IMG/VR virus record: IMGVR_UViG_3300032242_000723
Coordinates: 248,001-312,000 of that record
Length of the DNA stretch: 64,000 nt
Direction: 5' to 3' (one strand)
The notes below the pieces were generated by a model. The model was not told where the DNA came from. It did no database searches and saw only the letters and a program-made list of their open reading frames with translations. Below are positions 13,461-58,843 of this stretch, one piece after another. How positions within the stretch are numbered: position 1 is the first letter of the stretch; the number at the start of each line of letters is the position of its first letter. The position numbers were made by a program, and so were the translations under genes.

Positions 13461-16400
13461 ATGAATCTCAATGAACTCCATTCTTTCAAACTTGCAGATG
13501 CTATCAAGTTTCATACGGAACTTAATCCAAAACTTTGGAAAAATGACCAGTTAGATCCATTAGTTAGAAAGCAGTTATTGATTATTGCTGAGGACTTTGT
13601 TGAGGAGTTAGGAATACCTGATTTGGATATAGTTGATGTAACTATCTCAGGTTCTAACGCCGCATTTACCTGGACTAAACATAGCGATTTAGACCTTCAT
13701 ATCCTCGTAAATATGAGCGAGTTGCACCAAGACGCAATCTACCGCGAACTATTCAGAGCAAAGAAGACATTATATAATAGTAATCACGATATCACGGTGC
13801 ACGGCATCCCAGTTGAACTTTATGTTCAAGATTCAGCCGAACCTGTTGTATCGTTAGGTGAGTACAGTATCCTACATGATAAGTGGATCAAGGTCCCTGT
13901 TCGTAGAGCGGCCAAGTTAGATCAAAATGCTGCCAAAGCAAAGTTTGACCAACTTAAAGATTTGATTAGTGTTGCACTTAAGACTAAGCATAGCAAAAAG
14001 ATCAGTAAAGCCCTAGCATTAATCAAACGTTATCGCCAAGCTGGTCTTGACAAGGGCGGCGAGTTCAGTCCTGAGAACCTTGCCTTTAAGGCTGTTAGAT
14101 CGCAAGGTGCGATTGATGCACTATATGCAATGCGTGATAAGTTACACAGTGCAGAGTTAACGATTGAAGAAGGCTACGCTGGAGCCAAGATGAAGTTCTT
14201 GAAGCCAGGTGAATTGCGTGGATCGTACACGCCTGCTAAACTTACCGCATTAGGATTCAAGAAGTCACAGAACGGCTCATGGTTCATTCTACAATCTAAG
14301 TGGGAAGAGTTGCGTAAGACTGGTCAACTATATGAGACCGATGTTGTTGCAGAAAATCTCAGAAAAGAGTTTGAAGACTTTGATCCTGAAAACTTAGCTG
14401 AAGCACTTGACTCTACACCATATCCTTATGAAGAGATTTCGTCCACTCACCATAACTATATTGCTAGTAGAAGCCAATACATATTCACTACTGAAGATAA
14501 TCTGCCTTATGTAGCTATGATATTCAAATATCCAGGCAATAGAATCCGTATTGAGTTTAAGTCCACAAAGCAAACTCGTGATTTTCTTGGGTTCGAGGTG
14601 ACAGGTACAGGTGATGCCCGTAAGGTATTCGCTACTGTGATTGACATTGTGAAGAAGTATGTAGATAAGCATCATCCTGTTGAAATATCATTCTCAGCCA
14701 AAGAACCAAGCAGAGTCCGTTTATACGATGCGTTCTTGAAAAGACTGGATAGAGAGTTACCTGATTATGAAGGCAAATCGGGTCCAGGATACGAACCAGA
14801 TAATACATATTACCATCTCACTTTAAAAAATCAAAAGATAGACGAATCACTTGACTCACAACCATATCCTTATATTTCAACTATCGGCACAACAGGTGCA
14901 CATGAATATGCGTTCACTACGGATGACGATAACGAATATGAAGCCATAATCATTAATCAAAAATTTGGGATCCATGTATCTTTTTTTCTAAAACAAAAAC
15001 AACATAAAAATGGCCTAATCATAACCCGCACAGGTATAACGGGTACCGGCGATGCTCGTAGAGTGTTCGCTACTGTTATTGATATCGTGAAGAAATTCGC
15101 AGCAGCAGAGAAGCCTGAAGCCATAGTGTTTACTGCAAGTGAACCTAGCAGGATCCGTTTGTATGACGCATTCGTTAAAAGATTAGACAGAGAATTACCT
15201 GAGTATGCTGAGACTCGTAAAGAAAAAGGCATGGCAGAATGGTTCGTACTTCTACGCAAAACTAAGAAGATAGACGAAGCAACCGACCGTGACAGTGCGA
15301 TTAAGCAGATATTGAAGTTACAGAACACACAAGGTCGTTCACCAAGTGAGATAGAGGCATCAAAAGCTATCATCGCTAAAATGATGAAACGCTATAACAT
15401 TCATTCAAAAGAGTTGCTACCAGTTGAACGTAATCCATACCAAGATCGTATCAAACAAGCACGAGCCGAGCGTGATGTAGCAGGCGATATGCTAAAGGCA
15501 GAGTGGGATAGATTCAAAGGTGGGATCAAGGATAAGGTGTCTACTATCTTTAAAGAAGACTTAGACGAAGCACTTGATTCCCAACCATATCCATACGAGA
15601 TTGAAGAAGATAGCATAGCCTGGCAGATCAGCACCTTCACGACAAGTGACCGAAACCGTTATAAGGTTTGGGTAGTGAAATACAGTAATAAAGAAGTTTC
15701 GGTTGAATTCTCCTATCAAGGTAACGATGACATTGACACGAACTCAATGGAAATTGAAAACATAGGTGATGCCCGTAAGGTATTCGCTACTGTGATTGAG
15801 ATTGTAAAGAACTACGCTAAGAAGTATAAACCTAATAAGATTTCTTTTGACGCTGATCCAACTGAACCAAGCAGGATTCGTTTTTATAGTGCTCTTGTCA
15901 AGAGAGCAGACCGAATGTTGCCGGACTACGAAGATCAATCAATTGACTTCCTAGGTGACTTCAACCTTGTTAGAAAAGGTTATCAGTTTAACGAATCAAT
16001 AGTCTATCATGTGACCCCTACTAAAAATGTAAAGTCTATTATGCGTGACGGATTACGACCTCAAGTCGGCAACCGTTCGAGTAAGATTACAGGTGAAGAT
16101 AATGGTATCTTTGTCTTCAATAGCAAAAACGATGCAGAAGATGCTATAATGAACTGGCTCGGTGATGAGTTCGGTGAAGATGCTGAGTTAACCTTATTAG
16201 CAATCGATGCTGAAGGATTAGAACAGCATATGTCTACGGGTGCAGGATACGAAACAATCATGGATGTAGGGATCGAGCCTAGTCGTATTCGAGTAACTCA
16301 GGATATTCTTGAAGCATCTGGTTACATTCCAAGCAAGAAGGAAGCGAACGATCCTCGCTTCTCAACTGCGTTAACGGTAGATGTGAAACCTGATTCAATA

Positions 16401-16481
16401 CAAAAGAACGCTAAGGCATTTGGTTCAAAAACTTCACGAGCAGGTATTCCACCTCAAGCACGGACTGACGGCAAGATTTAA
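13461..16481 (+). CDS. 1006-aa polyvalent polyprotein: nucleotidyltransferase + 3 copies of an unknown domain + DUF2786-like + ADP-ribosyltransferase-like
   Basis: Start ATG 13461, 5 nt after TAAATA. SGSNA..SDLDLH Pol-beta NTase motif; three E(A/S)LDSxPYPY...GDARKVFATVI...EPSRIRLY units; KQILKLQ..SPSEIEASKAIIAKMMKRYNI; YHVT..NVKSIMRDGL.P. Confidence 0.8.
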   Translation: MNLNELHSFKLADAIKFHTELNPKLWKNDQLDPLVRKQLLIIAEDFVEELGIPDLDIVDVTISGSNAAFTWTKHSDLDLHILVNMSELHQDAIYRELFRAKKTLYNSNHDITVHGIPVELYVQDSAEPVVSLGEYSILHDKWIKVPVRRAAKLDQNAAKAKFDQLKDLISVALKTKHSKKISKALALIKRYRQAGLDKGGEFSPENLAFKAVRSQGAIDALYAMRDKLHSAELTIEEGYAGAKMKFLKPGELRGSYTPAKLTALGFKKSQNGSWFILQSKWEELRKTGQLYETDVVAENLRKEFEDFDPENLAEALDSTPYPYEEISSTHHNYIASRSQYIFTTEDNLPYVAMIFKYPGNRIRIEFKSTKQTRDFLGFEVTGTGDARKVFATVIDIVKKYVDKHHPVEISFSAKEPSRVRLYDAFLKRLDRELPDYEGKSGPGYEPDNTYYHLTLKNQKIDESLDSQPYPYISTIGTTGAHEYAFTTDDDNEYEAIIINQKFGIHVSFFLKQKQHKNGLIITRTGITGTGDARRVFATVIDIVKKFAAAEKPEAIVFTASEPSRIRLYDAFVKRLDRELPEYAETRKEKGMAEWFVLLRKTKKIDEATDRDSAIKQILKLQNTQGRSPSEIEASKAIIAKMMKRYNIHSKELLPVERNPYQDRIKQARAERDVAGDMLKAEWDRFKGGIKDKVSTIFKEDLDEALDSQPYPYEIEEDSIAWQISTFTTSDRNRYKVWVVKYSNKEVSVEFSYQGNDDIDTNSMEIENIGDARKVFATVIEIVKNYAKKYKPNKISFDADPTEPSRIRFYSALVKRADRMLPDYEDQSIDFLGDFNLVRKGYQFNESIVYHVTPTKNVKSIMRDGLRPQVGNRSSKITGEDNGIFVFNSKNDAEDAIMNWLGDEFGEDAELTLLAIDAEGLEQHMSTGAGYETIMDVGIEPSRIRVTQDILEASGYIPSKKEANDPRFSTALTVDVKPDSIQKNAKAFGSKTSRAGIPPQARTDGKI

Positions 16482-25786: not shown

Positions 25787-26242
25787 ATGTGGCTATTAAC
25801 AATCTTCTCGACCTTCCTCGTTCACGCTATGCTTATGACAGGCGTAATACTCCTTGCATGTTCTATGTTCTTAGGAGCTATCACATTCTTTAGGACATAT
25901 AAGTTTCCTATGCAGATTCTTGGGTTTATCTTGCTTGGTGCAGGATTGTACTATGAGGGTGCATTGGCTCATATGGCATCACAGGAAAAGGCAGTTGCTG
26001 CTCTTGAGATAAAGCTGAAGACTGCTGAAGCAGAATCATTGCGATTGAATGGTATAATCATTACTCAAAAGCGTGATTATGACATATTAGTGCAGTCAAA
26101 GGGCGACACTATCATCAAATATATTCATGATAGGTCAACTGTCATTGATAGCAAATGTGTAATCACACCCGATGTCATCGACGCACTCAATCAGGCTGCA
26201 AGCCTCGACGCGACCACTGAACCCAAGAAAGATAAGCCATGA
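25787..26242 (+). CDS. Putative inner-membrane spanin (Rz-like)
   Basis: N-terminal TM helices followed by a coiled coil; directly upstream of a lipoprotein gene. Confidence 0.6.
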   Translation: MWLLTIFSTFLVHAMLMTGVILLACSMFLGAITFFRTYKFPMQILGFILLGAGLYYEGALAHMASQEKAVAALEIKLKTAEAESLRLNGIIITQKRDYDILVQSKGDTIIKYIHDRSTVIDSKCVITPDVIDALNQAASLDATTEPKKDKP

Positions 26243-26541
26243 AAAAACTTATAATCGTTGCCTGTTTGTTCCTCGCATCTTGTTCTCACATTGCGGTTCC
26301 TGTAACTGCTAAGTTCCCAGATGCACCAGTTGAACTTAGACAAGAATGTGAAACACTCACTAAACTAGCATCTACTGCCAAACTAAGCACGGTAATGATC
26401 GCCGTCACTGAAAACTATGTCAAATATGCAAAGTGTAAGCGTCAAAATCAAGCTTGGAATGAATGGTATGACGGACAAAAGAAGATATTTGACGAAGCTA
26501 CAGAGACACGCAAGTTCCCTTGGATTCATATCAAGAAGTAA
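26239..26541 (+). CDS. Putative outer-membrane lipoprotein spanin (Rz1-like)
   Basis: Signal with lipobox FLASC; Pro-rich segment; C...Y..C pattern. Confidence 0.7.
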   Translation: MKKLIIVACLFLASCSHIAVPVTAKFPDAPVELRQECETLTKLASTAKLSTVMIAVTENYVKYAKCKRQNQAWNEWYDGQKKIFDEATETRKFPWIHIKK

Positions 26542-26581: not shown

Positions 26582-27139
26582 ATGAGTACCACACCACTAT
26601 ATAATCAACAAGTTATCAACATTGGTGCACAGCCAAATGATGGCGTGGGCGATCCGTTACGTGTAGCGTTTGAGAAAGTAAACAATAACTTCTCTAATCT
26701 ATTTGCTACCTTTGTTAACTCTACTATTGCTTATACATTTGGAAACACTGCTGGTCAGGTTATCTTTGAATATCCAGCAAACGCTTTCTCTGAGGGTCAG
26801 TTCTATATTCAATCAAGTGATACTGGAACACCAGACAGACAAAATATTCAACTTTTTGCACAGATTAATCCAGCACATGATACTATCAAGTTCAGTGGTT
26901 ATGGTTCTACCTTCTTTGGTAACTGTACTTCTCGCTATAATATGGATGTTGTTGGTGGCAATGTAAGAATATTGGCCAACCCATTGATTGACGATGATAT
27001 GACTCACTTTATCTCTTCGCAGATCATGTGGACAGGCCCAAATGTACCAGGTATGTATATCTCTCCCGATGGATATGCTAACTCATCTATCGCTACCGAA
27101 ACAGTGGTCAACATCACAACAGAGCAACCTGCACCATGA
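26582..27139 (+). CDS. Baseplate wedge-like structural protein (T4 gp9/gp10 N-terminal motif)
   Basis: INIGAQPNDGVGDPLRVAFEKVNNNF motif. Confidence 0.7.
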   Translation: MSTTPLYNQQVINIGAQPNDGVGDPLRVAFEKVNNNFSNLFATFVNSTIAYTFGNTAGQVIFEYPANAFSEGQFYIQSSDTGTPDRQNIQLFAQINPAHDTIKFSGYGSTFFGNCTSRYNMDVVGGNVRILANPLIDDDMTHFISSQIMWTGPNVPGMYISPDGYANSSIATETVVNITTEQPAP

Positions 27140-27555
27140 GAGCTTGGGAATTTCTAACAGAAGCACAACTTCATCCAGAAGAAGCATCGTTGCCTACAAA
27201 GCCAACCGACAAGTTACTTCCTGATCAGGCCGGCGCATTGCCCGCTACTTATATCATTCCTGAACTACCTAACCAAGATCCATATCTACAATATCGTTTC
27301 GGAGTAGCATTAGCAGGCGCTAAAGGTAGAAAACAACGAGAACAAGATGGTGTTTCTAGTATGGATCGCACGAGTGCATTCGGTGAAGCAGAGATCATTG
27401 TATCGTACGGTGATGATGTCGGACCATTTATTGACGATGCTCTTAAGCAAATGGGCATGAGTGGAAAGAAGATGGTAAGCACTCCTACGAGTATAGAAAC
27501 TTCTGATGTTACTAAAGTTAGCCCAATGAGACCGTTTAAAGGATATGCAAGATGA
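27136..27555 (+). CDS. Putative head/internal protein with capsid-targeting-like N-terminus
   Basis: MRAWEFLTE; paralog of the next gene (shared S..E...V.KVSP ending). Confidence 0.6.
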   Translation: MRAWEFLTEAQLHPEEASLPTKPTDKLLPDQAGALPATYIIPELPNQDPYLQYRFGVALAGAKGRKQREQDGVSSMDRTSAFGEAEIIVSYGDDVGPFIDDALKQMGMSGKKMVSTPTSIETSDVTKVSPMRPFKGYAR

Positions 27556-27932
27556 GAGCACATGAGTTTATTAGTGAAGGTACTGGTGTTCCACCTGAAT
27601 CCCATACTCACGCCCACAGCGGCGGTTATAAGTTTATGGATAACGGAACAGACAGAACTTACAACTTGAATCGCATCATGGCCGCAGCAGGGCAATCTGA
27701 CGGTAAATCAACGAAAGCAATAAAAGACTTCGATGATGAAAGTTTTGCTGGTAAACATAACATGGCTTATCCTTATACTGAGATTGAACACAACATGCTG
27801 AAGCAAGCATTCAATACTGTTTCTCCTAGCGATGTTCATCGTATTCCTGGCGACAAAAGTAGTGCTGAGCATCCATCTACACATAAAGTAAGTCCGGTTG
27901 CTAAACGACCTACTGATCACAGAAAAAAATAA
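27552..27932 (+). CDS. Putative head/internal protein with capsid-targeting-like N-terminus
   Basis: MRAHEFISE; tandem paralog of the previous gene. Confidence 0.6.
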   Translation: MRAHEFISEGTGVPPESHTHAHSGGYKFMDNGTDRTYNLNRIMAAAGQSDGKSTKAIKDFDDESFAGKHNMAYPYTEIEHNMLKQAFNTVSPSDVHRIPGDKSSAEHPSTHKVSPVAKRPTDHRKK

Positions 27933-27962
27933 TCACAAGCCTGTTGCTATATAAATATTATC

Positions 27963-28658
27963 ATGAGCAACATTGACATCAACCAAACACTAGACCTAAT
28001 CAAACTCAAGTTCTACAACGAATATCTGTACACCGCCCACCTGTACGATGAAGGCGACAGTCCATTTCATAAAGAACTAACAGCACAAGTCGTAAAGACT
28101 TATGTAGACCCACTCAATCTTCCAAAAGATGCACATATTCTTGATCTTGGATGCGGCCCTGGCTACTTCTTAGACGAGATGAAGGAACGCGAGTACACTA
28201 ACACTGTTGGTGTCACACTCAGTCCAGGTGATATCAAGATTTGTGAAGACAAGGGACATGTGATCAAGAAGTATGATCTATCATTTCTTCCACAGAAGGA
28301 TGGCTACTACGATGAGTCAGTAGACTTTATCTTCTTGCGTCATGCACTTGAGCATAGTCCGTATCCTATCTTCTCATTGATGGAATATAATCGTATCCTC
28401 AAGCAGGGATCAAAGATTTACATTGAAGTTCCAGCCCCAGACTGTGAACGACAACATGAATCTAACCTGAATCACTATTCTATCTTAGGTTCTAATCAGT
28501 TGGGAGCACTATTACAACGCTGTGGATTCAACATTGATGCGTTTAACAACTTAGAGTTTGATCTTCATATTCCAACCGAAGATGGTGAAACTAAGAAGGT
28601 TACTGAAAAGTATTATTGCATAGTTGCCACGAAGGCTAAACCACTAGATGTAAAGTAA
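27963..28658 (+). CDS. Class I SAM-dependent methyltransferase
   Basis: ILDLGCGPG, VDFIFLRHALEH, RILKQG. Confidence 0.9.
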   Translation: MSNIDINQTLDLIKLKFYNEYLYTAHLYDEGDSPFHKELTAQVVKTYVDPLNLPKDAHILDLGCGPGYFLDEMKEREYTNTVGVTLSPGDIKICEDKGHVIKKYDLSFLPQKDGYYDESVDFIFLRHALEHSPYPIFSLMEYNRILKQGSKIYIEVPAPDCERQHESNLNHYSILGSNQLGALLQRCGFNIDAFNNLEFDLHIPTEDGETKKVTEKYYCIVATKAKPLDVK

Positions 28659-29102: not shown

Positions 29103-31664
29103 ATGGCCTTCATCCAAAATCTGTTTACAAGTAGAGACAATAGTGCCAACGCATCAACGTATGTAGGTCAGCAAGGCCGCATCTGGTGGGATCCGTTGAC
29201 CAACTCTATGTATTACAGTGATGGATCAACTCCAGGCGGTATACCAGTTGGAGCAGGTGGCAATCCATTCAATCAGGTTCTTAATACAAACAGCAATGTT
29301 ACCTTTAGTAGCGTTACTGTAACGGGAAACATCAATCTAGGTGCTTCATCAACTATTACAGGCAACCTTAATCTTTCAAACACCTCTGTTGCTAATCTTG
29401 GTAACTTTACGATCAGCGATCAAACACTAGCAGGTACAATCAACAATAGAACTATTAGAATCAGTCCGGTCGGCAACGCAGCCGTACAAGTATTAAACGG
29501 TATTCAGGTATATCAAGGAAACTTTAGCACAAGTCCATTGTTCAGCGTTACCAATAGTGGAGTTGTATCAACAATAGTTCCTAACGCAGTAAGTTATTTA
29601 GGTGCGTTTGAAATCGTAGGTAACCCTGCAGGCAATACAGTTCCTCCTCAGAACTATGGCGTGTTGCTACACACTACAGGTGTGCCGTCAGTTCCTGCTC
29701 GTATCTATAACGACGGTGTTGCAAACTACGCAGCGATTATTAATCGTAGATATAACGGCACAAGTGCTGCACCAACTGGCGTACTTGCTAATGAAATAAT
29801 GGGTCGTATTGGTGCTACTCCTTATCTCAATAACGCAACATGGACATCATTAAGTACTACACGTATTGACATGATTACAACTGAAATACAAACTACCGCT
29901 GCTCAAGGTAGCAAGATGGAGTTTTATACAGTAGCAAATGGCGATACTGTTCCTACTCTAACTATGGATTTAGACACTGATACTGGAATCACACTACACG
30001 CTAATGTACTTCCTGCCCACACTAATCAGTTTTCATTGGGCAACTCTACTTTTAAATGGAATGATTTGTGGCTTGGCCCAACAAGTCTGCACATGGAAGA
30101 TACTGTAACACATTTGAACACTGCATTGACTGTACAAAACGGTACATTGTTCATTGACGGTTCGCAGCGTATTCAAATCGGTAATATGCAAATGACGACT
30201 GATGGCATCAGTCTAGTAACTGCAAACACTGGTTCAAATGTTCAAATCGGAACTGCTGGTGACACTGGTTATATGCAACTCAATATGCCAGGTATCAAGT
30301 TTAGAGACAGCACGATTCAAACAACCGCCGCTGTTCCTCTAAGTTATATGGGTGCAGCAAACGGCGTAGCAACACTTGGTGCAGACAGCAAAGTTATACC
30401 ATCACAACTTCCAGCAGGAGCAGTGTTCTTTAAAGGCATATGGGATGCATCAACTAACACTCCAACCCTCGTAAATGGTACTGGAACTGCTGGTTGGGAA
30501 TATCAATGTTCTGTTGCAGGCACGGTAAACTTTGGCGCTGGCAATATCACATTTGCAGTGGGCGACTTTGTAATCTACAATGGTTCGTTGTGGCAAAAGA
30601 TCGCAGGTTCAGGTGCAGGCGTCACCAGCTTTAATACGAGAACAGGTGTAGTCACACTAACAAGTAGTGATGTTACTACTGCATTGTCTAACAGCAGCAT
30701 TGTAAACAGTAAACTAGTTAATCCAAATGTAACGATCACAACAGGTGCAGGCTTATCTGGCGGCGGAGTACTTGCATTGGGCGGAAGCCTCGCACTTGTT
30801 GCTAATGTCGGTAATGTTGTTGGTGGTACTGGCGTAAATGTTGCCGCTGCATCAGGAAACTACACGGTTAGCATCGGTCAACCAGTTGGAACTGCGAATA
30901 GCGTACAGTTCTATGCACTAACAACGACAACGACTGTTGCTGCAACTGGAAACATCACAGGCGGTAACTTAACAACGGGTGGCAAAGTTGTTGCAACCGG
31001 AAACATTGAAACAAGTGGTAACTTAGTTACACCAAACACTGTTATTAACAGTAGCATGACGAGTAACGGTAATGTTAACTTCACTGGTGCTAATGTCAGC
31101 TTAGGTGCAGTCGGTAATGTTCGTGTTACAGGCGGTACTAACGGTCAGTTCTTGACGACCAATGGTTCAGGCACACTAAGCTGGTCAAATGTTGCAGGCG
31201 CCAATGTTTCAGGAACAGTAGCGAATGCAACTTATGCAACAAGCGCAGGTATTGCCACTTCAGCAAATGCAGTGGCAGGTGCCAATGTTTCAGGAACAGT
31301 AGCGAATGCAACTTATGCAACAAGCGCAGGTATTGCCACTTCAGCAAATGCAGTGGCAGGTGCTAATGTTTCAGGAACAGTAACAACCGCAACCAACTTA
31401 TCGGCAGCTAGTAGTATTTTAGCAGGGTCGTTCTCATTGGCAGTCAATGTAGGTAAAAACAGTTTGACTACATTAACACAAACTATTTCCGGGCTAACAA
31501 CTAGTCATAAAGTTATCATTACACCTGCAACAGCAATGCCGGATAATAGTGCCGGTTTTGAAGCAGCATGGGCAAGTTCTTCTAATACACTTAGTCTACA
31601 GTTTTCAAATCCCGGCGGCGCAGTCAATGCTTCATTCAACATAAACTATTTTGCCTGGGTATAA
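29103..31664 (+). CDS. Tail fibre/virion appendage protein
   Basis: Mtd-N-like start (VGQQGRIWWD...SDGSTPGG); Gly/Thr/Asn/Ala-rich beta repeats; NGVATLGADSKV..SQLP; W.AS.N.P.L..G.G..G..Y module. Confidence 0.75.
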   Translation: MAFIQNLFTSRDNSANASTYVGQQGRIWWDPLTNSMYYSDGSTPGGIPVGAGGNPFNQVLNTNSNVTFSSVTVTGNINLGASSTITGNLNLSNTSVANLGNFTISDQTLAGTINNRTIRISPVGNAAVQVLNGIQVYQGNFSTSPLFSVTNSGVVSTIVPNAVSYLGAFEIVGNPAGNTVPPQNYGVLLHTTGVPSVPARIYNDGVANYAAIINRRYNGTSAAPTGVLANEIMGRIGATPYLNNATWTSLSTTRIDMITTEIQTTAAQGSKMEFYTVANGDTVPTLTMDLDTDTGITLHANVLPAHTNQFSLGNSTFKWNDLWLGPTSLHMEDTVTHLNTALTVQNGTLFIDGSQRIQIGNMQMTTDGISLVTANTGSNVQIGTAGDTGYMQLNMPGIKFRDSTIQTTAAVPLSYMGAANGVATLGADSKVIPSQLPAGAVFFKGIWDASTNTPTLVNGTGTAGWEYQCSVAGTVNFGAGNITFAVGDFVIYNGSLWQKIAGSGAGVTSFNTRTGVVTLTSSDVTTALSNSSIVNSKLVNPNVTITTGAGLSGGGVLALGGSLALVANVGNVVGGTGVNVAAASGNYTVSIGQPVGTANSVQFYALTTTTTVAATGNITGGNLTTGGKVVATGNIETSGNLVTPNTVINSSMTSNGNVNFTGANVSLGAVGNVRVTGGTNGQFLTTNGSGTLSWSNVAGANVSGTVANATYATSAGIATSANAVAGANVSGTVANATYATSAGIATSANAVAGANVSGTVTTATNLSAASSILAGSFSLAVNVGKNSLTTLTQTISGLTTSHKVIITPATAMPDNSAGFEAAWASSSNTLSLQFSNPGGAVNASFNINYFAWV
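31200..31382 (+). repeat. 81-bp (27-aa) tandem repeat, about 2.3 copies
   Basis: 31200-31280 is identical to 31281-31361, plus a partial third copy; encodes ANVSGTVANATYATSAGIATSANAVAG. Confidence 0.9.
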
Positions 31665-33491: not shown

Positions 33492-33530
33492 GATTGCACA
33501 GACTATTTCACATTTAGTATAAATAGTATC

Positions 33531-55017: not shown

Positions 55018-55263
55018 ATGCAAAAGAAAACAAAAAGTCTCCTTGAGGAGTTGCAGTCGTACGGTGAGAATCGTGACATTAATCATGTCATTGAATCGCG
55101 GGCGTCCAACATCATCACAAGTGCTATCAACCTGATAGAACTGATGCAACGTAACTATTCTCCTGAGAAGGCTGAACTTCTAGAGAAGAAGTTGCTTAGT
55201 GCAATCAAAGGCAAAGATCAAGCAAGATTTTCTAAAAGTTTGAGGAAGAAAAATGAAGATTAA
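55018..55263 (+). CDS. Hypothetical late protein
   Basis: Follows AATAAATA. Confidence 0.65.
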   Translation: MQKKTKSLLEELQSYGENRDINHVIESRASNIITSAINLIELMQRNYSPEKAELLEKKLLSAIKGKDQARFSKSLRKKNED

Positions 55264-56275
55264 TGAGTTTGGTAATAAGCAGCAAGTTGAAGAGGGATTA
55301 GGCGACGGCCTACAAAGCATAGGCAATGCAGTCATCGGAAAAAATGCTACTTCTGCTATCAAAGGAATGTTCACTGGAAATCAAGAACAAGGTGTAGAAG
55401 ATGCCTTTGTAAGAAACTTTTTGACAAGTGTTACTCCTAGATTAAAACAAGCAATTTCTACTGGTTTAGTCTCTCTTCCAGCCGCCTCTGCCGCACCTGA
55501 CCTGACCAACAGAACGGCTGATGGAGCCCCACCTACGCCAGAACCAGCAGCAGCACCAAATACAACATCCTCTAATTCTAGAAAAGATGCAGCAGGAAAC
55601 GTACCATATGATGATTTAGCTGAAACTGCATATAGCAAATATGCTAAACTCAATGCGATCTTTGAAAGCATCATGTCTGAAGAAGAGGTAGTCGGTGGTT
55701 CTGAAAGTATTTCTCAATTTTTAGAGGACTGGTTTACTAAGTACATGCAAGGATACAACTGGCAATCAAGAAAACCTGTATTTGATGCAATATTTAAAGA
55801 AGTAGAATCAACATATAGCAAGACAGGCGGAAAAGAAGCACTTAAAAAACTAGCAAAGGCCGCTTTTGCAATCACAGGCGGAGCAACTCCTTCAAAGATC
55901 AATGCAACTCCTAATGATACGACGAAAAGTAATACAATACAGAATCAGCAGCCAACCCAAAATAATCAAGGCGTAGGGCAAGGTAGAGGGCAAGGCGCCG
56001 GTCAAAGTGTAGGTGGACAGGCACCAATGAGCGCATCATTCGTACAAGCACATTTGGATGCGTTGAAACAATCTGACCCTAAAGGGTATGCTGCTATTGT
56101 GAGCAAGATTATTAAAGAATATAAGAAAACATTTGCTGCAAGAAATTCTAAGAAGGCGGCGGCACCTACTCCTCCTCCAGTTCCAGCGGCAGCACCAGCG
56201 GCCGGCCCCGTCACTAAGACTGAACCGCCGGTTAAGATAGCAGAATCAAGACTTAGACGTTACCCAAAACTATAA
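55253..56275 (+). CDS. Putative head/internal protein with Ala/Pro/Gln-rich linkers
   Basis: MKINEF start; VEEG, IFES and IAES sites. Confidence 0.55.
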   Translation: MKINEFGNKQQVEEGLGDGLQSIGNAVIGKNATSAIKGMFTGNQEQGVEDAFVRNFLTSVTPRLKQAISTGLVSLPAASAAPDLTNRTADGAPPTPEPAAAPNTTSSNSRKDAAGNVPYDDLAETAYSKYAKLNAIFESIMSEEEVVGGSESISQFLEDWFTKYMQGYNWQSRKPVFDAIFKEVESTYSKTGGKEALKKLAKAAFAITGGATPSKINATPNDTTKSNTIQNQQPTQNNQGVGQGRGQGAGQSVGGQAPMSASFVQAHLDALKQSDPKGYAAIVSKIIKEYKKTFAARNSKKAAAPTPPPVPAAAPAAGPVTKTEPPVKIAESRLRRYPKL

Positions 56276-58510: not shown

Positions 58511-58843
58511 ATGCGTCTCTTTGAATTTGATCAGGAAAAAGCTCAGGTAACTCAGATCGTTGCTTTAATAAATCAGTTAAAGCAGGATATTGAGGATGGA
58601 GACATCGATCCTCAAGATTATACCGTTGACGAGCTACTTGACTATTTTCAAATGTATGACATCATATTAGATGTAAACGATCTATACAACATGATTAAAG
58701 TGCCTCCGCTTAAGGACCTTATCAAAAACATTCAAGGTGATAAGGTATTATTTGTTGGTCAAGGCGAAGAAGACGCCCTCGACGCACCAGAAGATGAGCA
58801 AGAAAAAGTCGTTGCTAAGATGGCTAAATCTGCAATGAAGTAA
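58511..58843 (+). CDS. Acidic putative head protein
   Basis: MRLFEF start. Confidence 0.55.
   Translation: MRLFEFDQEKAQVTQIVALINQLKQDIEDGDIDPQDYTVDELLDYFQMYDIILDVNDLYNMIKVPPLKDLIKNIQGDKVLFVGQGEEDALDAPEDEQEKVVAKMAKSAMK

What the first reader, a model, noticed from the sequence alone, without database searches (positions are those of the whole stretch)
27136..27932. T4-like capsid-targeting N-termini on a set of small late proteins
Seen: MRAWEFLTE/A and MRAHEFISE/G on tandem paralogs, with related starts MNLNEL (13461), MKPSEI (28728), MKINEF (55253), MKLNDF (57810) and MRLFEF (58511). Established: T4 internal proteins use the N-terminal sequence MKTYQEFIAE, which is cleaved after the final Glu. 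Inference: a shared address code identifies the packaged and injected proteome of this phage.
Basis: partly seen in the sequence, partly recalled or inferred. Interest (0 to 1): 0.65.

Follow-up and report, generated by a model that had tools for sequence, protein, structure and literature searches.

The report
T4-style capsid-address tag, jumbo phage
Two small neighbouring genes of an uncultured 333-kb freshwater phage start with the same nine amino acids as nine other unrelated proteins of that phage; the tag closely resembles the phage T4 signal that loads proteins into the head and is then cut off, so it probably marks the proteins this phage packs (and perhaps injects), though no virion data exist to prove it.

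Summary
The two ORFs exist as described: 27136-27555 starts MRAWEFLTE and 27552-27932 starts MRAHEFISE. They are remote paralogs. The window lies in a 333-kb IMG/VR jumbo phage with T4-type head genes.

- **Non-random tag.** M-[KR]-x-x-E-[FIL]-[IL]-x-E occurs 12 times in a six-frame scan of the genome, 11 at ORF starts. About 0.01 are expected, and the reversed motif gives 0.
- **Unrelated carriers.** These include three kinase-like proteins next to the major capsid gene, a GH19 lysin fusion, a GNAT protein and DUF6267/DUF6934 proteins. Some orthologs and paralogs lack the tag.
- **Conservation.** Uncultured relatives carry 5-10 tags each; cultured relatives carry 0-2.
- **Fit to T4.** The conserved positions match the T4 CTS residues mapped for targeting and processing. 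The tag ends in the gp21 cleavage motif L/I-X-E, and the phage encodes a gp21-family protease with catalytic His and Ser.

Packaging, cleavage and injection are inferred, not shown.

Verdict: a probable new member of the T4 CTS kind. Confidence is about 0.65 and interest is moderate.

The parts
27136..27555 (+). ORF1, 139 aa. It is a small protein of unknown function and a tagged member of a family with more than 400 metagenomic homologs.
   Evidence: There is no Pfam or PHROG hit. The AF2 model is poor, with pLDDT 69 and pTM 0.32.
27136..27162 (+). The 9-codon tag MRAWEFLTE of ORF1: a putative capsid-targeting propeptide with predicted cleavage after Glu9 (L-T-E|A).
   Evidence: A3, F6 and E9 are invariant, and M1, R2 and E5 are at least 90% conserved, in 82 homologs. 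Residues 10-26 are variable and carry indels. The model shows a helix at 3-12 followed by a disordered stretch at 13-24. PSSM score 22.2 bits.
27552..27932 (+). ORF2, 126 aa. It is a remote paralog of ORF1 and is also tagged.
   Evidence: hhalign against the ORF1 family gives 99.6% probability.
27552..27578 (+). The 9-codon tag MRAHEFISE of ORF2, with predicted cleavage after Glu9 (I-S-E|G).
   Evidence: M1, R2, A3, E5, F6 and E9 are invariant in 9 family members that are only 25-62% identical overall. It has the highest PSSM score in the genome, 28.1 bits.
26582..27139 (+). Upstream fibre/baseplate-like ORF of 185 aa. Its stop overlaps the ORF1 start (ATGA), so it is context only and is not tagged.
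   Evidence: Its N-terminus matches baseplate-wedge and tail-fibre PHROGs. The order fibre-like gene, ORF1, ORF2, methyltransferase-like gene is conserved in G001 and G002.
58511..58843 (+). Borderline candidate, 110 aa, starting MRLFEFDQE. It has Asp where the tag has Ile or Leu.
   Evidence: PSSM 8.5 bits, between the clear set (at least 13.9) and background. The G001 ortholog starts MRLYEFANS.
55253..56275 (+). Borderline candidate, 340 aa, starting MKINEFGNKQQVEEG. It may be a longer variant ending V-E-E|G. It lies among replication genes.
   Evidence: PSSM 4.9 bits. The N-terminus is conserved in a G002 protein (MKINEFNSPKQVDEG) whose body is otherwise barely alignable. Its neighbours are a primase, a helicase and an exonuclease.

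Best explanation
The first nine residues of both ORFs, consensus M-R-A-x-E-F-[I/L]-x-E, are a T4-type capsid-targeting sequence. This is a short N-terminal propeptide that directs a protein into the assembling prohead core. The phage's gp21-family prohead protease then removes it by cutting after the final Glu ([I/L]-x-E|), leaving the mature protein inside the head with the DNA.

The same tag marks about 11 proteins of this 333-kb phage:
- ORF1 and ORF2 in the window.
- Three kinase-like proteins next to the capsid gene.
- A GH19 lysin fusion and a GNAT protein.
- A ligase-like DUF6267 protein and a DUF6934 protein.
- Two unknowns.

Together these form the likely head-internal cargo, and part of it is probably delivered into the host with the DNA.

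**Shown:** the motif, its position specificity, its portability, its conservation, and the presence of the protease.
**Inferred:** targeting, cleavage and injection.
For: 1. **Position-specific excess.** Of 12 six-frame hits, 11 are at ORF starts, against 0.012 expected; the reversed motif gives 0. The hydrophobic-x-E count spikes at residues 7-9 in three genomes, at 17 against about 8.
2. **Portability.** With the first 12 residues removed, carriers fall into unrelated families with different domains: GH19, GNAT, DUF6267, DUF6934 and kinase-like phrog_15752.
   - Each genome also has an untagged GH19 protein of about 207 aa.
   - The domain at 435-648 of the 650-aa GNAT protein stands alone directly behind the tag in G001 and G002.
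   - DUF6267 orthologs in G002 and in cyanophages lack the tag.
3. **Protein-level selection.** Glu codons follow genome usage and Ala3 uses all four codons.
4. **Conservation.** The tag is invariant in more than 80 ORF1 homologs and in 9 ORF2 homologs while the adjacent residues vary. Five uncultured relatives hold 5-10 matches each, against 0-1 in the control.
5. **Fit to T4.**
   - Aligned on EF[IL]xE, T4 residue F7 (targeting) and residues I8 and E10 (processing) correspond to the most conserved positions here, F6, [IL]7 and E9 (PMC9026906).
   - gp21 cuts after L/I-X-E.
   - The 10-codon version of the pattern (position 2 left open) recovers ipII, ipIII, gene 24 and alt in T4.
6. **Machinery.** The phage has a PF03420 protease with the catalytic His and Ser retained and its own invariant L-R-E at residues 5-7, alongside a gp23 capsid protein and a portal in a T4-ordered module. 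Three tagged kinase-like genes lie immediately after the capsid gene and a homing endonuclease, the slot held by gene 24 in T4.
7. **Virion evidence from relatives.** The PA5oct homolog of the tagged 422-aa protein is an MS-detected structural protein that starts MKLFEVFTLYE. The GNAT domain matches parts of DarB-like and PLxRFG giant phage proteins.
Against: - No virion proteome, N-terminal sequence or expression data exist for this uncultured phage.
- The cultured relatives PA5oct, Vibrio phage 2.275.O and Phosso have only 0-2 matches, so the tag is not a general feature of the wider group.
- The residue after Glu9 is small (S, G, A or T) in only 16 of 28 cases. Tyr, Asn, His, Phe, Arg, Leu and Lys also occur.
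- Several carriers lie among non-structural genes. The DUF6267 plus cytidylyltransferase pair looks metabolic.
- The mature ORF1 is acidic (pI 5.4), unlike the basic T4 internal proteins.
- The scaffold-like gene shows no sequence similarity to T4 gp22.
- AGA is over-used at codon 2 (17 of 25 Arg codons against 28% genome-wide), which hints at some nucleotide- or initiation-level bias.
Confidence: 0.65

Rival explanations
1. The 9-mer is only a protease-removable propeptide or a partner-binding helix, for example one that keeps enzymes inactive until cleaved. It has no role in head targeting, and the proteins act inside the infected cell without being packaged.
For: The [IL]-x-E ending and the protease are the best-supported parts. 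Several carriers are enzymes in non-structural neighbourhoods.
Against: gp21-type proteases are known to act inside proheads (PMC9958956; PMC9026906). The conserved positions include E5 and F6, which are upstream of the cleavage determinants, and F6 aligns with the T4 targeting residue F7. One carrier family is virion-borne in PA5oct.
Confidence: 0.12
2. The tag addresses proteins to something other than the head. Candidates are a degradation tag for the phage-encoded ClpP system, a chaperone-recognition signal, or another localisation signal.
For: The phage encodes a ClpP-like ORF. T4 precedent exists for N-termini that direct proteins to GroEL (cited in PMC10052503). There is no direct evidence for a head location.
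Against: The motif has no resemblance to hydrophobic signal peptides. Its closest sequence match is the T4 CTS and the gene 24 and alt propeptides. The kinase-like carriers sit inside the head-gene module.
Confidence: 0.1
3. The similarity is a nucleotide-level feature of the first 27 bases, either a translation-initiation context or a recombination site for shuffling gene cassettes, and not a peptide signal.
For: ATGAGAGC dominates the starts, and AGA is over-used at codon 2. Tagged genes cluster in variable tandem arrays.
Against: Synonymous codons vary freely at conserved residues. These include GAA and GAG at genome frequency, four Ala codons, AGA/CGT/CGA/CGC/AAG at position 2, and six or more codons at positions 6-7. 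The kinase genes use ATGCGTATC yet keep the peptide pattern.
Confidence: 0.05
4. The carriers are simply diverged paralogs that keep an ancestral N-terminus, with no signal function.
For: ORF1 and ORF2 are paralogs, and so are the three kinase-like genes.
Against: Across families the bodies share no similarity and carry different Pfam domains. Tagged and untagged versions of one domain coexist. The tag stays N-terminal whatever the domain order.
Confidence: 0.03

Closest known systems
Phage T4 capsid-targeting sequence (CTS) of internal proteins IPII and IPIII, removed by prohead protease gp21
   Same: - It is N-terminal, about 10 residues long, and shared by otherwise unrelated proteins.
- The core E-F-I/L-x-E is identical in pattern: T4 has MKTYQEFIAE and this phage has MRAxEF[IL]xE.
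- It ends in the gp21 site L/I-X-E.
- A gp21-family protease and a gp23-type capsid protein are present.
   Different: - The tag is one residue shorter, 9 against 10, and has Arg-Ala at positions 2-3 instead of Lys-Thr.
- It is carried by about 11 proteins, including enzymes of up to 650 aa (756 aa in G002), not only small basic proteins.
- No experimental proof of targeting or cleavage exists.
- The host and phage are uncultured and come from freshwater.
T4 gene 24 and Alt N-terminal propeptides (MAKINELLRE, MELITELFDE)
   Same: These are short N-terminal peptides ending in hydrophobic-x-E on head-located proteins. Alt is a packaged, injected enzyme, analogous to the tagged kinase-like, GNAT and GH19 proteins. 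The kinase-like genes start MRINE[IL][IL]NE and occupy the slot after the capsid gene plus a homing endonuclease, as gene 24 does in T4.
   Different: The proteins here are not capsid-vertex paralogs. PF07068 matches only once in the genome.
Ejection/inner-body protein propeptides of phiKZ-like giant phages (phiKZ, 201phi2-1, SPN3US)
   Same: Many head-internal proteins are processed after Glu by a gp21-related protease, and the propeptides are thought to target proteins to the prohead (PMC5694885; PMC9026906).
   Different: Those propeptides are mostly longer than 100 residues, have no common N-terminal 9-mer, and use S/A-X-E or A-X-E rather than I/L-X-E. This phage belongs to the T4-core jumbo group, with its capsid protein 65-73% identical to those of PA5oct, GAP32, CBB and others.
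PA5oct structural protein EST35_0205
   Same: It is homologous to the tagged 422-aa protein (about 31% identity over 180 residues). It was detected in virions by MS, and its N-terminus MKLFEVFTLYE is CTS-like.
   Different: It does not match the strict 9-mer. PA5oct as a whole has only one strict-pattern hit, and that one lies inside an ORF.

Membership tests
T4-type capsid-targeting sequence (CTS) / gp21-processed head-internal proteins | A short peptide of about 10 residues at the extreme N-terminus, shared by proteins whose mature parts are unrelated. | tested here: met
   Eleven of 12 genome-wide hits are at ORF starts. Carrier bodies are unrelated and carry different domains.
T4-type capsid-targeting sequence (CTS) / gp21-processed head-internal proteins | The peptide ends in the gp21 cleavage motif L/I-X-E. 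| tested here: met
   Position 7 is I, L or V in 28 of 28 tags from three genomes and position 9 is E in 28 of 28, but the search motif itself required both. A small residue follows in 16 of 28. Independent support: a hydrophobic-x-E spike at residues 7-9, and E9 invariant in ORF1/ORF2 homologs found by whole-protein similarity. The motif definition is from PMC9026906.
T4-type capsid-targeting sequence (CTS) / gp21-processed head-internal proteins | Conservation of the residues that were mapped as functional in the T4 IPIII CTS (4 and 7 for targeting; 8 and 10 for processing). | tested here: inconclusive
   Aligned on EF[IL]xE, T4 F7, I8 and E10 correspond to F6 (21 of 28 F, the rest I or L), [IL]7 and E9, which are the most conserved positions. 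The counterpart of T4 Tyr4 is not conserved here: it is A3 or a variable position 4.
T4-type capsid-targeting sequence (CTS) / gp21-processed head-internal proteins | The genome encodes a gp21-family (Peptidase_S77) prohead protease with its catalytic residues. | tested here: met
   PF03420 scores 93 bits, above its cut-off. The protein is 34% identical to T4 gp21. The His in GEVDHPD and the Ser in GVSSRG align with the two positions that read Ala in the 5JBL crystal sequence but His and Ser in the T4 genome.
T4-type capsid-targeting sequence (CTS) / gp21-processed head-internal proteins | A T4-type prohead with a gp22-like scaffolding core that the CTS binds. | tested here: inconclusive
   The portal, protease, a coiled-coil 365-aa ORF and the gp23 capsid gene lie in T4 order. 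However, the 365-aa ORF shows no sequence similarity to T4 gp22 (E 1.6) and matches only an unnamed PHROG.
T4-type capsid-targeting sequence (CTS) / gp21-processed head-internal proteins | The tagged proteins are incorporated into proheads, the tag is cleaved off, and the mature protein is present in virions and injected. | not testable with these tools
   The phage is uncultured, and no proteomic or RNA data exist. Indirect evidence only: a PA5oct homolog is a structural protein. The predicted complex of the protease with ORF1 residues 1-45 gave no verdict.
T4 internal proteins proper (small, basic, DNA-associated IPI/IPII/IPIII) | A small, basic mature protein. | tested here: not met
   Mature ORF1 is 14.1 kDa with pI 5.4. 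ORF2 is 12.9 kDa with pI 8.9. Other carriers are 10-71 kDa in this genome (up to 83 kDa in G002) with pI 4.8-9.6. There is no sequence similarity to any phage protein in the GenBank collection.
phiKZ-type ejection-protein propeptides | Long propeptides (tens to more than 100 residues) cut at S/A-X-E. | tested here: not met
   The tag is 9 residues long and position 7 is I, L or V, never S or A. The definition is from PMC5694885 and PMC9026906.

The most novel reading that the evidence does not exclude
A very abundant, uncultured clade of freshwater jumbo phages (140-525 kb) uses a 9-residue, sequence-readable address tag to load a changeable set of ready-made enzymes into the head for delivery with the DNA. 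The set includes up to three T7-0.7-like kinases, a GNAT acetyltransferase, a GH19 wall hydrolase and a ligase-like protein. Genes gain and lose the tag over evolutionary time. If this is right, the injected 'first-minute' effector set of uncultured phages could be read directly from metagenomes.
Probability: 0.4. Interest if true: 0.7.

Novelty: new member of a known kind. Interest (0 to 1): 0.55.

Why it matters
If the tag works as in T4, the head-internal (and probably injected) proteins of a whole clade of uncultured giant phages can be listed from sequence alone. This normally requires purified virions and mass spectrometry.

The list already points to unusual cargo, namely kinase-like proteins, an acetyltransferase and a lysin fusion. 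These are candidates for host take-over or anti-defence factors that act before any phage gene is expressed. The gain and loss of the tag on otherwise conserved enzymes shows how phages recruit new proteins into the virion.

The mechanism itself is not new. The T4 CTS has been known since 1996, and T4 reviews already suggested it is an evolutionary device of T4-like phages.

Tried and rejected
- **Similarity searches for ORF1 and ORF2.** PHROGs, Pfam and tblastn against 50,697 phage records found nothing.
- **Structure of ORF1.** The AF2 model from 82 sequences was poor (pLDDT 69, pTM 0.32). Foldseek against BFVD found only one uncharacterised uncultured-phage protein (E 4.6e-4, TM 0.27), and the ESM Atlas found nothing usable. 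No fold or function is assigned.
- **Complex prediction.** The run on protease residues 20-212 with ORF1 residues 1-45 returned 'no answer' (score 0.00). It is not evidence either way.
- **Cultured relatives.**
  - PA5oct has one strict-pattern hit, which lies inside an ORF not detected by MS.
  - Phosso has two hits on hypothetical proteins.
  - Vibrio phage 2.275.O has none.
- **Expression.** No RNA run holds the region, so read laying was not used and 'late' stays untested. The promoter and terminator scan of 23.5-29.5 kb was at shuffle level.
  - 13461 is rejected: its N-terminus is part of a conserved domain.
  - 28728 is rejected on PSSM score.
  - 57810 does not reach the 32 best PSSM scores and has no phage tblastn match. 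It does have a virion-structural PHROG hit and L-R-E at residues 16-18, so it may be a head protein with a different, longer propeptide.
- **Scaffold.** The scaffold-like ORF is not detectably homologous to T4 gp22.
Full report
**1. What is in the sequence**

The window is bases 248001-312000 of a 333,115-bp IMG/VR virus record with 41% G+C and a CheckV completeness of 92%. ORF1 (27136-27555, 139 aa) starts MRAWEFLTEA, and ORF2 (27552-27932, 126 aa) starts MRAHEFISEG. Both begin at the first available start codon, and each start overlaps the preceding stop as ATGA.

Pairwise BLASTP aligns only the first 17 residues. Family profiles show the two are remote paralogs: hhalign gives 99.6% probability over 124 columns, and both share a C-terminal S-P-x-x-x-F-K-G-Y signature. 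Neither matches Pfam, PHROGs or any of 50,697 GenBank phage records.

**2. Is the shared start more than chance?**

Yes, by several independent tests.
- The strict motif M-[KR]-x-x-E-[FILVM]-[ILVM]-x-E heads 10 of about 424 crude ORFs, against 0.012 expected from N-terminal composition.
- In a six-frame scan of the whole genome it occurs 12 times. Eleven are at the start of ORFs of at least 100 aa. One of these (genome 38126) is a re-called start that overlaps the previous stop as ATGA.
- The reversed motif occurs 0 times. The motif with any of the 19 other residues at position 1 occurs only 5 times.
- The count of hydrophobic-x-Glu peaks at residues 7-9 in this genome and in two relatives, at 17 against a background of about 8.
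- A PSSM built only from two other genomes separates this genome's N-termini cleanly. Ten ORFs score at least 13.9 bits and the re-called start scores 10.2. Next come window 58511 (8.5), window 55253 (4.9) and genome 40347 (2.3), and then background at 0 or below.

The 13461 N-terminus belongs to a conserved ~235-aa domain found in cyanophages and Lak phages.

**3. Who carries the tag**

The carriers in this genome are:

| Genome position | Size | Identity |
|---|---|---|
| 28780 | 372 aa | DUF6267; its cyanophage homologs carry a ligase-like KWDG motif |
| 36861 | 422 aa | unknown |
| 38126 | 280 aa | DUF6934 |
| 43142 | 432 aa | C-terminal GH19 lysin domain |
| 44547 | 100 aa | unknown |
| 103821 | 650 aa | GNAT domain |
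| 174187, 174750, 175328 (minus strand) | 187-192 aa | three tandem kinase-like paralogs (phrog_15752, T7 0.7-type) |
| window ORF1 and ORF2 | 139 and 126 aa | unknown |

With the first 12 residues removed, the families do not match each other. The tag behaves as a portable module:
- Every genome examined also has an untagged stand-alone GH19 protein of about 207 aa.
- The C-terminal domain of the 650-aa GNAT protein occurs in G001 and G002 as a protein of about 230 aa directly behind the tag.
- The DUF6267 orthologs in G002 and in T4-like cyanophages lack the tag, and homology starts at about residue 19.
- The 100-aa protein's ortholog in G002 is untagged.
- A tagged G002 protein corresponds to genome 40347, which has a degenerate start, MRATELKKG.

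**4. Level of selection**

At the invariant Glu positions, GAA and GAG occur at genome frequency. Ala3 uses all four codons, and positions 6-7 use six or more codons each. The constraint is therefore on the peptide.

AGA is over-used at codon 2 (17 of 25 Arg codons against 28% genome-wide). This is a mild initiation-context bias that does not explain the downstream pattern.

**5. Conservation elsewhere**

ORF1 has more than 400 homologs in metagenomes, at 56-83% identity, on contigs of up to about 357 kb. In 82 of them A3, F6 and E9 are invariant and M1, R2 and E5 are at least 90% conserved, while residues 10-26 are variable and carry indels. ORF2 homologs that are only 25-62% identical overall keep M1, R2, A3, E5, F6 and E9.

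A back-translated pattern finds 5-10 copies in each of five uncultured relatives of 142-525 kb, against 0-1 for the control pattern. Full ORF calls in G001 and G002 give 8 and 9 tagged proteins, often in tandem arrays.

The nearest cultured phages by capsid protein are Phosso, Vibrio phage 2.275.O, PA5oct, GAP32 and CBB, at 65-73% identity. The three of these that were scanned (PA5oct, Vibrio phage 2.275.O, Phosso) have only 0-2 pattern hits, none informative. Runs that hold the DNA are freshwater or aquatic metagenomes, and no RNA run holds it.

**6. The machinery that would read the tag**

The genome has a T4-ordered head module on the minus strand at 174-186 kb:
- a portal;
- a 77-aa protein;
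- an acidic protein with a virion-structural PHROG hit;
- a Peptidase_S77 protease (PF03420, 93 bits);
- a 365-aa coiled-coil ORF;
- the gp23-family capsid protein (PF07068, 327 bits);
- a homing endonuclease;
- the three tagged kinase-like genes.

This order is supported.

The protease is 34% identical to T4 gp21. It keeps the His and Ser at the two positions that read Ala in the 5JBL crystal sequence. Its own N-terminus has an invariant L-R-E at residues 5-7, which parallels the L-I-E-9 noted for T4 gp21. The capsid protein's N-terminal 45 residues hold several L-x-E sites ahead of the region that aligns with mature T4 gp23. The scaffold-like ORF is assigned by position only, because it shows no similarity to T4 gp22.

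**7. Comparison with T4**

Reading the T4 record with the 10-codon version of the pattern (position 2 left open) recovers the following:
- ipII and ipIII, both MKTYQEFIAE;
- gene 24, MAKINELLRE;
- alt, MELITELFDE;
- ORF 61.1, MKTFKEFIKE;
- one site internal to gene 16.

According to PMC9026906, gp21 cuts after L/I-X-E. The first 10 residues of IPIII suffice for head incorporation. Residues 4 and 7 matter most for targeting, and residues 8 and 10 for processing. The authors suggest the CTS is an evolutionary device for loading diverse proteins.

Aligned on E-F-[IL]-x-E, T4 F7, I8 and E10 fall on the most conserved positions here, F6, [IL]7 and E9. The tag here is one residue shorter and has Arg-Ala at positions 2-3. 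PMC3012670, PMC9958956 and PMC5694885 give the same picture of CTS function. They also contrast it with the long S/A-X-E propeptides of phiKZ-like phages, which this tag does not resemble.

**8. Indirect evidence for a virion location**

- The tagged 422-aa protein has a PA5oct homolog (EST35_0205). It lies in a block of MS-detected structural proteins, was itself MS-detected, and starts MKLFEVFTLYE.
- The GNAT domain matches parts of proteins annotated as DarB-like antirestriction or PLxRFG. From general knowledge these are large phage proteins taken to be virion-borne; this was not checked here.
- Three kinase-like carriers sit in the head module. TATAAATA, the T4 late-promoter consensus, lies 6 nt upstream of the first of them.

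**9. What remains unknown**

The functions of ORF1 and ORF2 are not identified.
- The AF2 model is poor. It predicts a helix over residues 3-12, a disordered stretch at 13-24 and a small, mostly helical body.
- Fold and language-model searches gave nothing usable.
- Mature ORF1 is acidic and ORF2 mildly basic, so they are not obvious copies of the basic T4 internal proteins.
- The predicted protease-substrate complex returned no verdict.
- No data address cleavage, packaging, copy number or injection.

**10. Verdict**

The in-window list of 'related starts' is mostly wrong.

The best explanation is a T4-type capsid-targeting and processing propeptide read by a gp21-family protease (confidence about 0.65). 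This makes it a new member of a known kind, with an unusually broad and enzyme-rich cargo in an abundant uncultured phage clade.

Rivals are:
- a cleavage-only propeptide;
- another destination for the tag;
- a nucleotide-level element;
- plain paralogy.

Each is less consistent with the position specificity, portability, codon pattern and head-module context. All could be settled by virion or viral-fraction proteomics and a simple cleavage assay.

Noticed in passing
window 27950-27957 (before the ATG at 27963), window 33518-33525 (before 33531); genome 175916 (minus strand) and 320938 (minus strand): TATAAATA, the T4 late-promoter consensus, sits only 5-6 nt upstream of four start codons, including that of the first tagged kinase-like gene. 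That is too close for a normal leader with a Shine-Dalgarno site, so the late mRNAs may be leaderless or the motif may have another role. Overall there are 27 copies in the genome, 10 of them within 60 nt of a same-strand ORF start.
   Followed up: partly
window 25787-26242 and 26239-26541: This is a likely spanin pair. The first ORF has a PHROG 'signal peptide motif' hit. The second starts MKKLIIVACLFLASC, a lipobox, and overlaps the end of the first ORF by four bases. It lies just upstream of the fibre-like gene and ORF1/ORF2.
   Followed up: no
genome 175912-176685 (minus strand; outside the window, locus L006 5912-6685): A homing endonuclease (phrog_655, E 4e-49) is inserted between the major capsid gene and the first tagged kinase-like gene. 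This mirrors segD between T4 genes 23 and 24.
   Followed up: partly
T4 record NC_000866, 18966-19130 (minus strand): The uncharacterised T4 ORF 61.1 starts MKTFKEFIKE, a near-copy of the IPII/IPIII CTS ending in I-K-E. It may be an unrecognised head-targeted protein of T4 itself.
   Followed up: no
genome 28780-31609 (locus L004 1780-4609): The DUF6267 gene is followed by a gene with a cytidylyltransferase domain, both here and in T4-like cyanophages (S-CAM4, S-H9-1). The cyanophage homologs carry K-W-D-G, which resembles ligase/nucleotidyltransferase motif I. Only this phage's copy carries the tag.
   Followed up: partly
window 13461-16481: This 1006-aa protein has a widely conserved N-terminal domain of about 235 aa (found in cyanophages, Lak phages and huge uncultured phages) and three DUF6934 stretches. 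It shares internal domains with two tagged proteins (genome 38126 and G001 122249).
   Followed up: partly
window 29103-31664: This fibre-like protein of 853 aa contains an exact tandem repeat of about 27 residues (AGANVSGTVANATYATSAGIATSANAV) and tail-protein PHROG hits.
   Followed up: no
genome 84574-85164: A phage-encoded ClpP-like ORF (N-terminus MSLVPIVLEQTARGERSYDI) appeared as a chance match to the relaxed motif. PA5oct is also annotated with a ClpP.
   Followed up: no
genome 179119-179757 (minus strand) and metagenomes: The prohead protease is 85-100% identical across the 120 best cluster representatives listed. The search hit its 8000-candidate ceiling, which indicates that this phage clade is very abundant in public metagenomes.
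   Followed up: no
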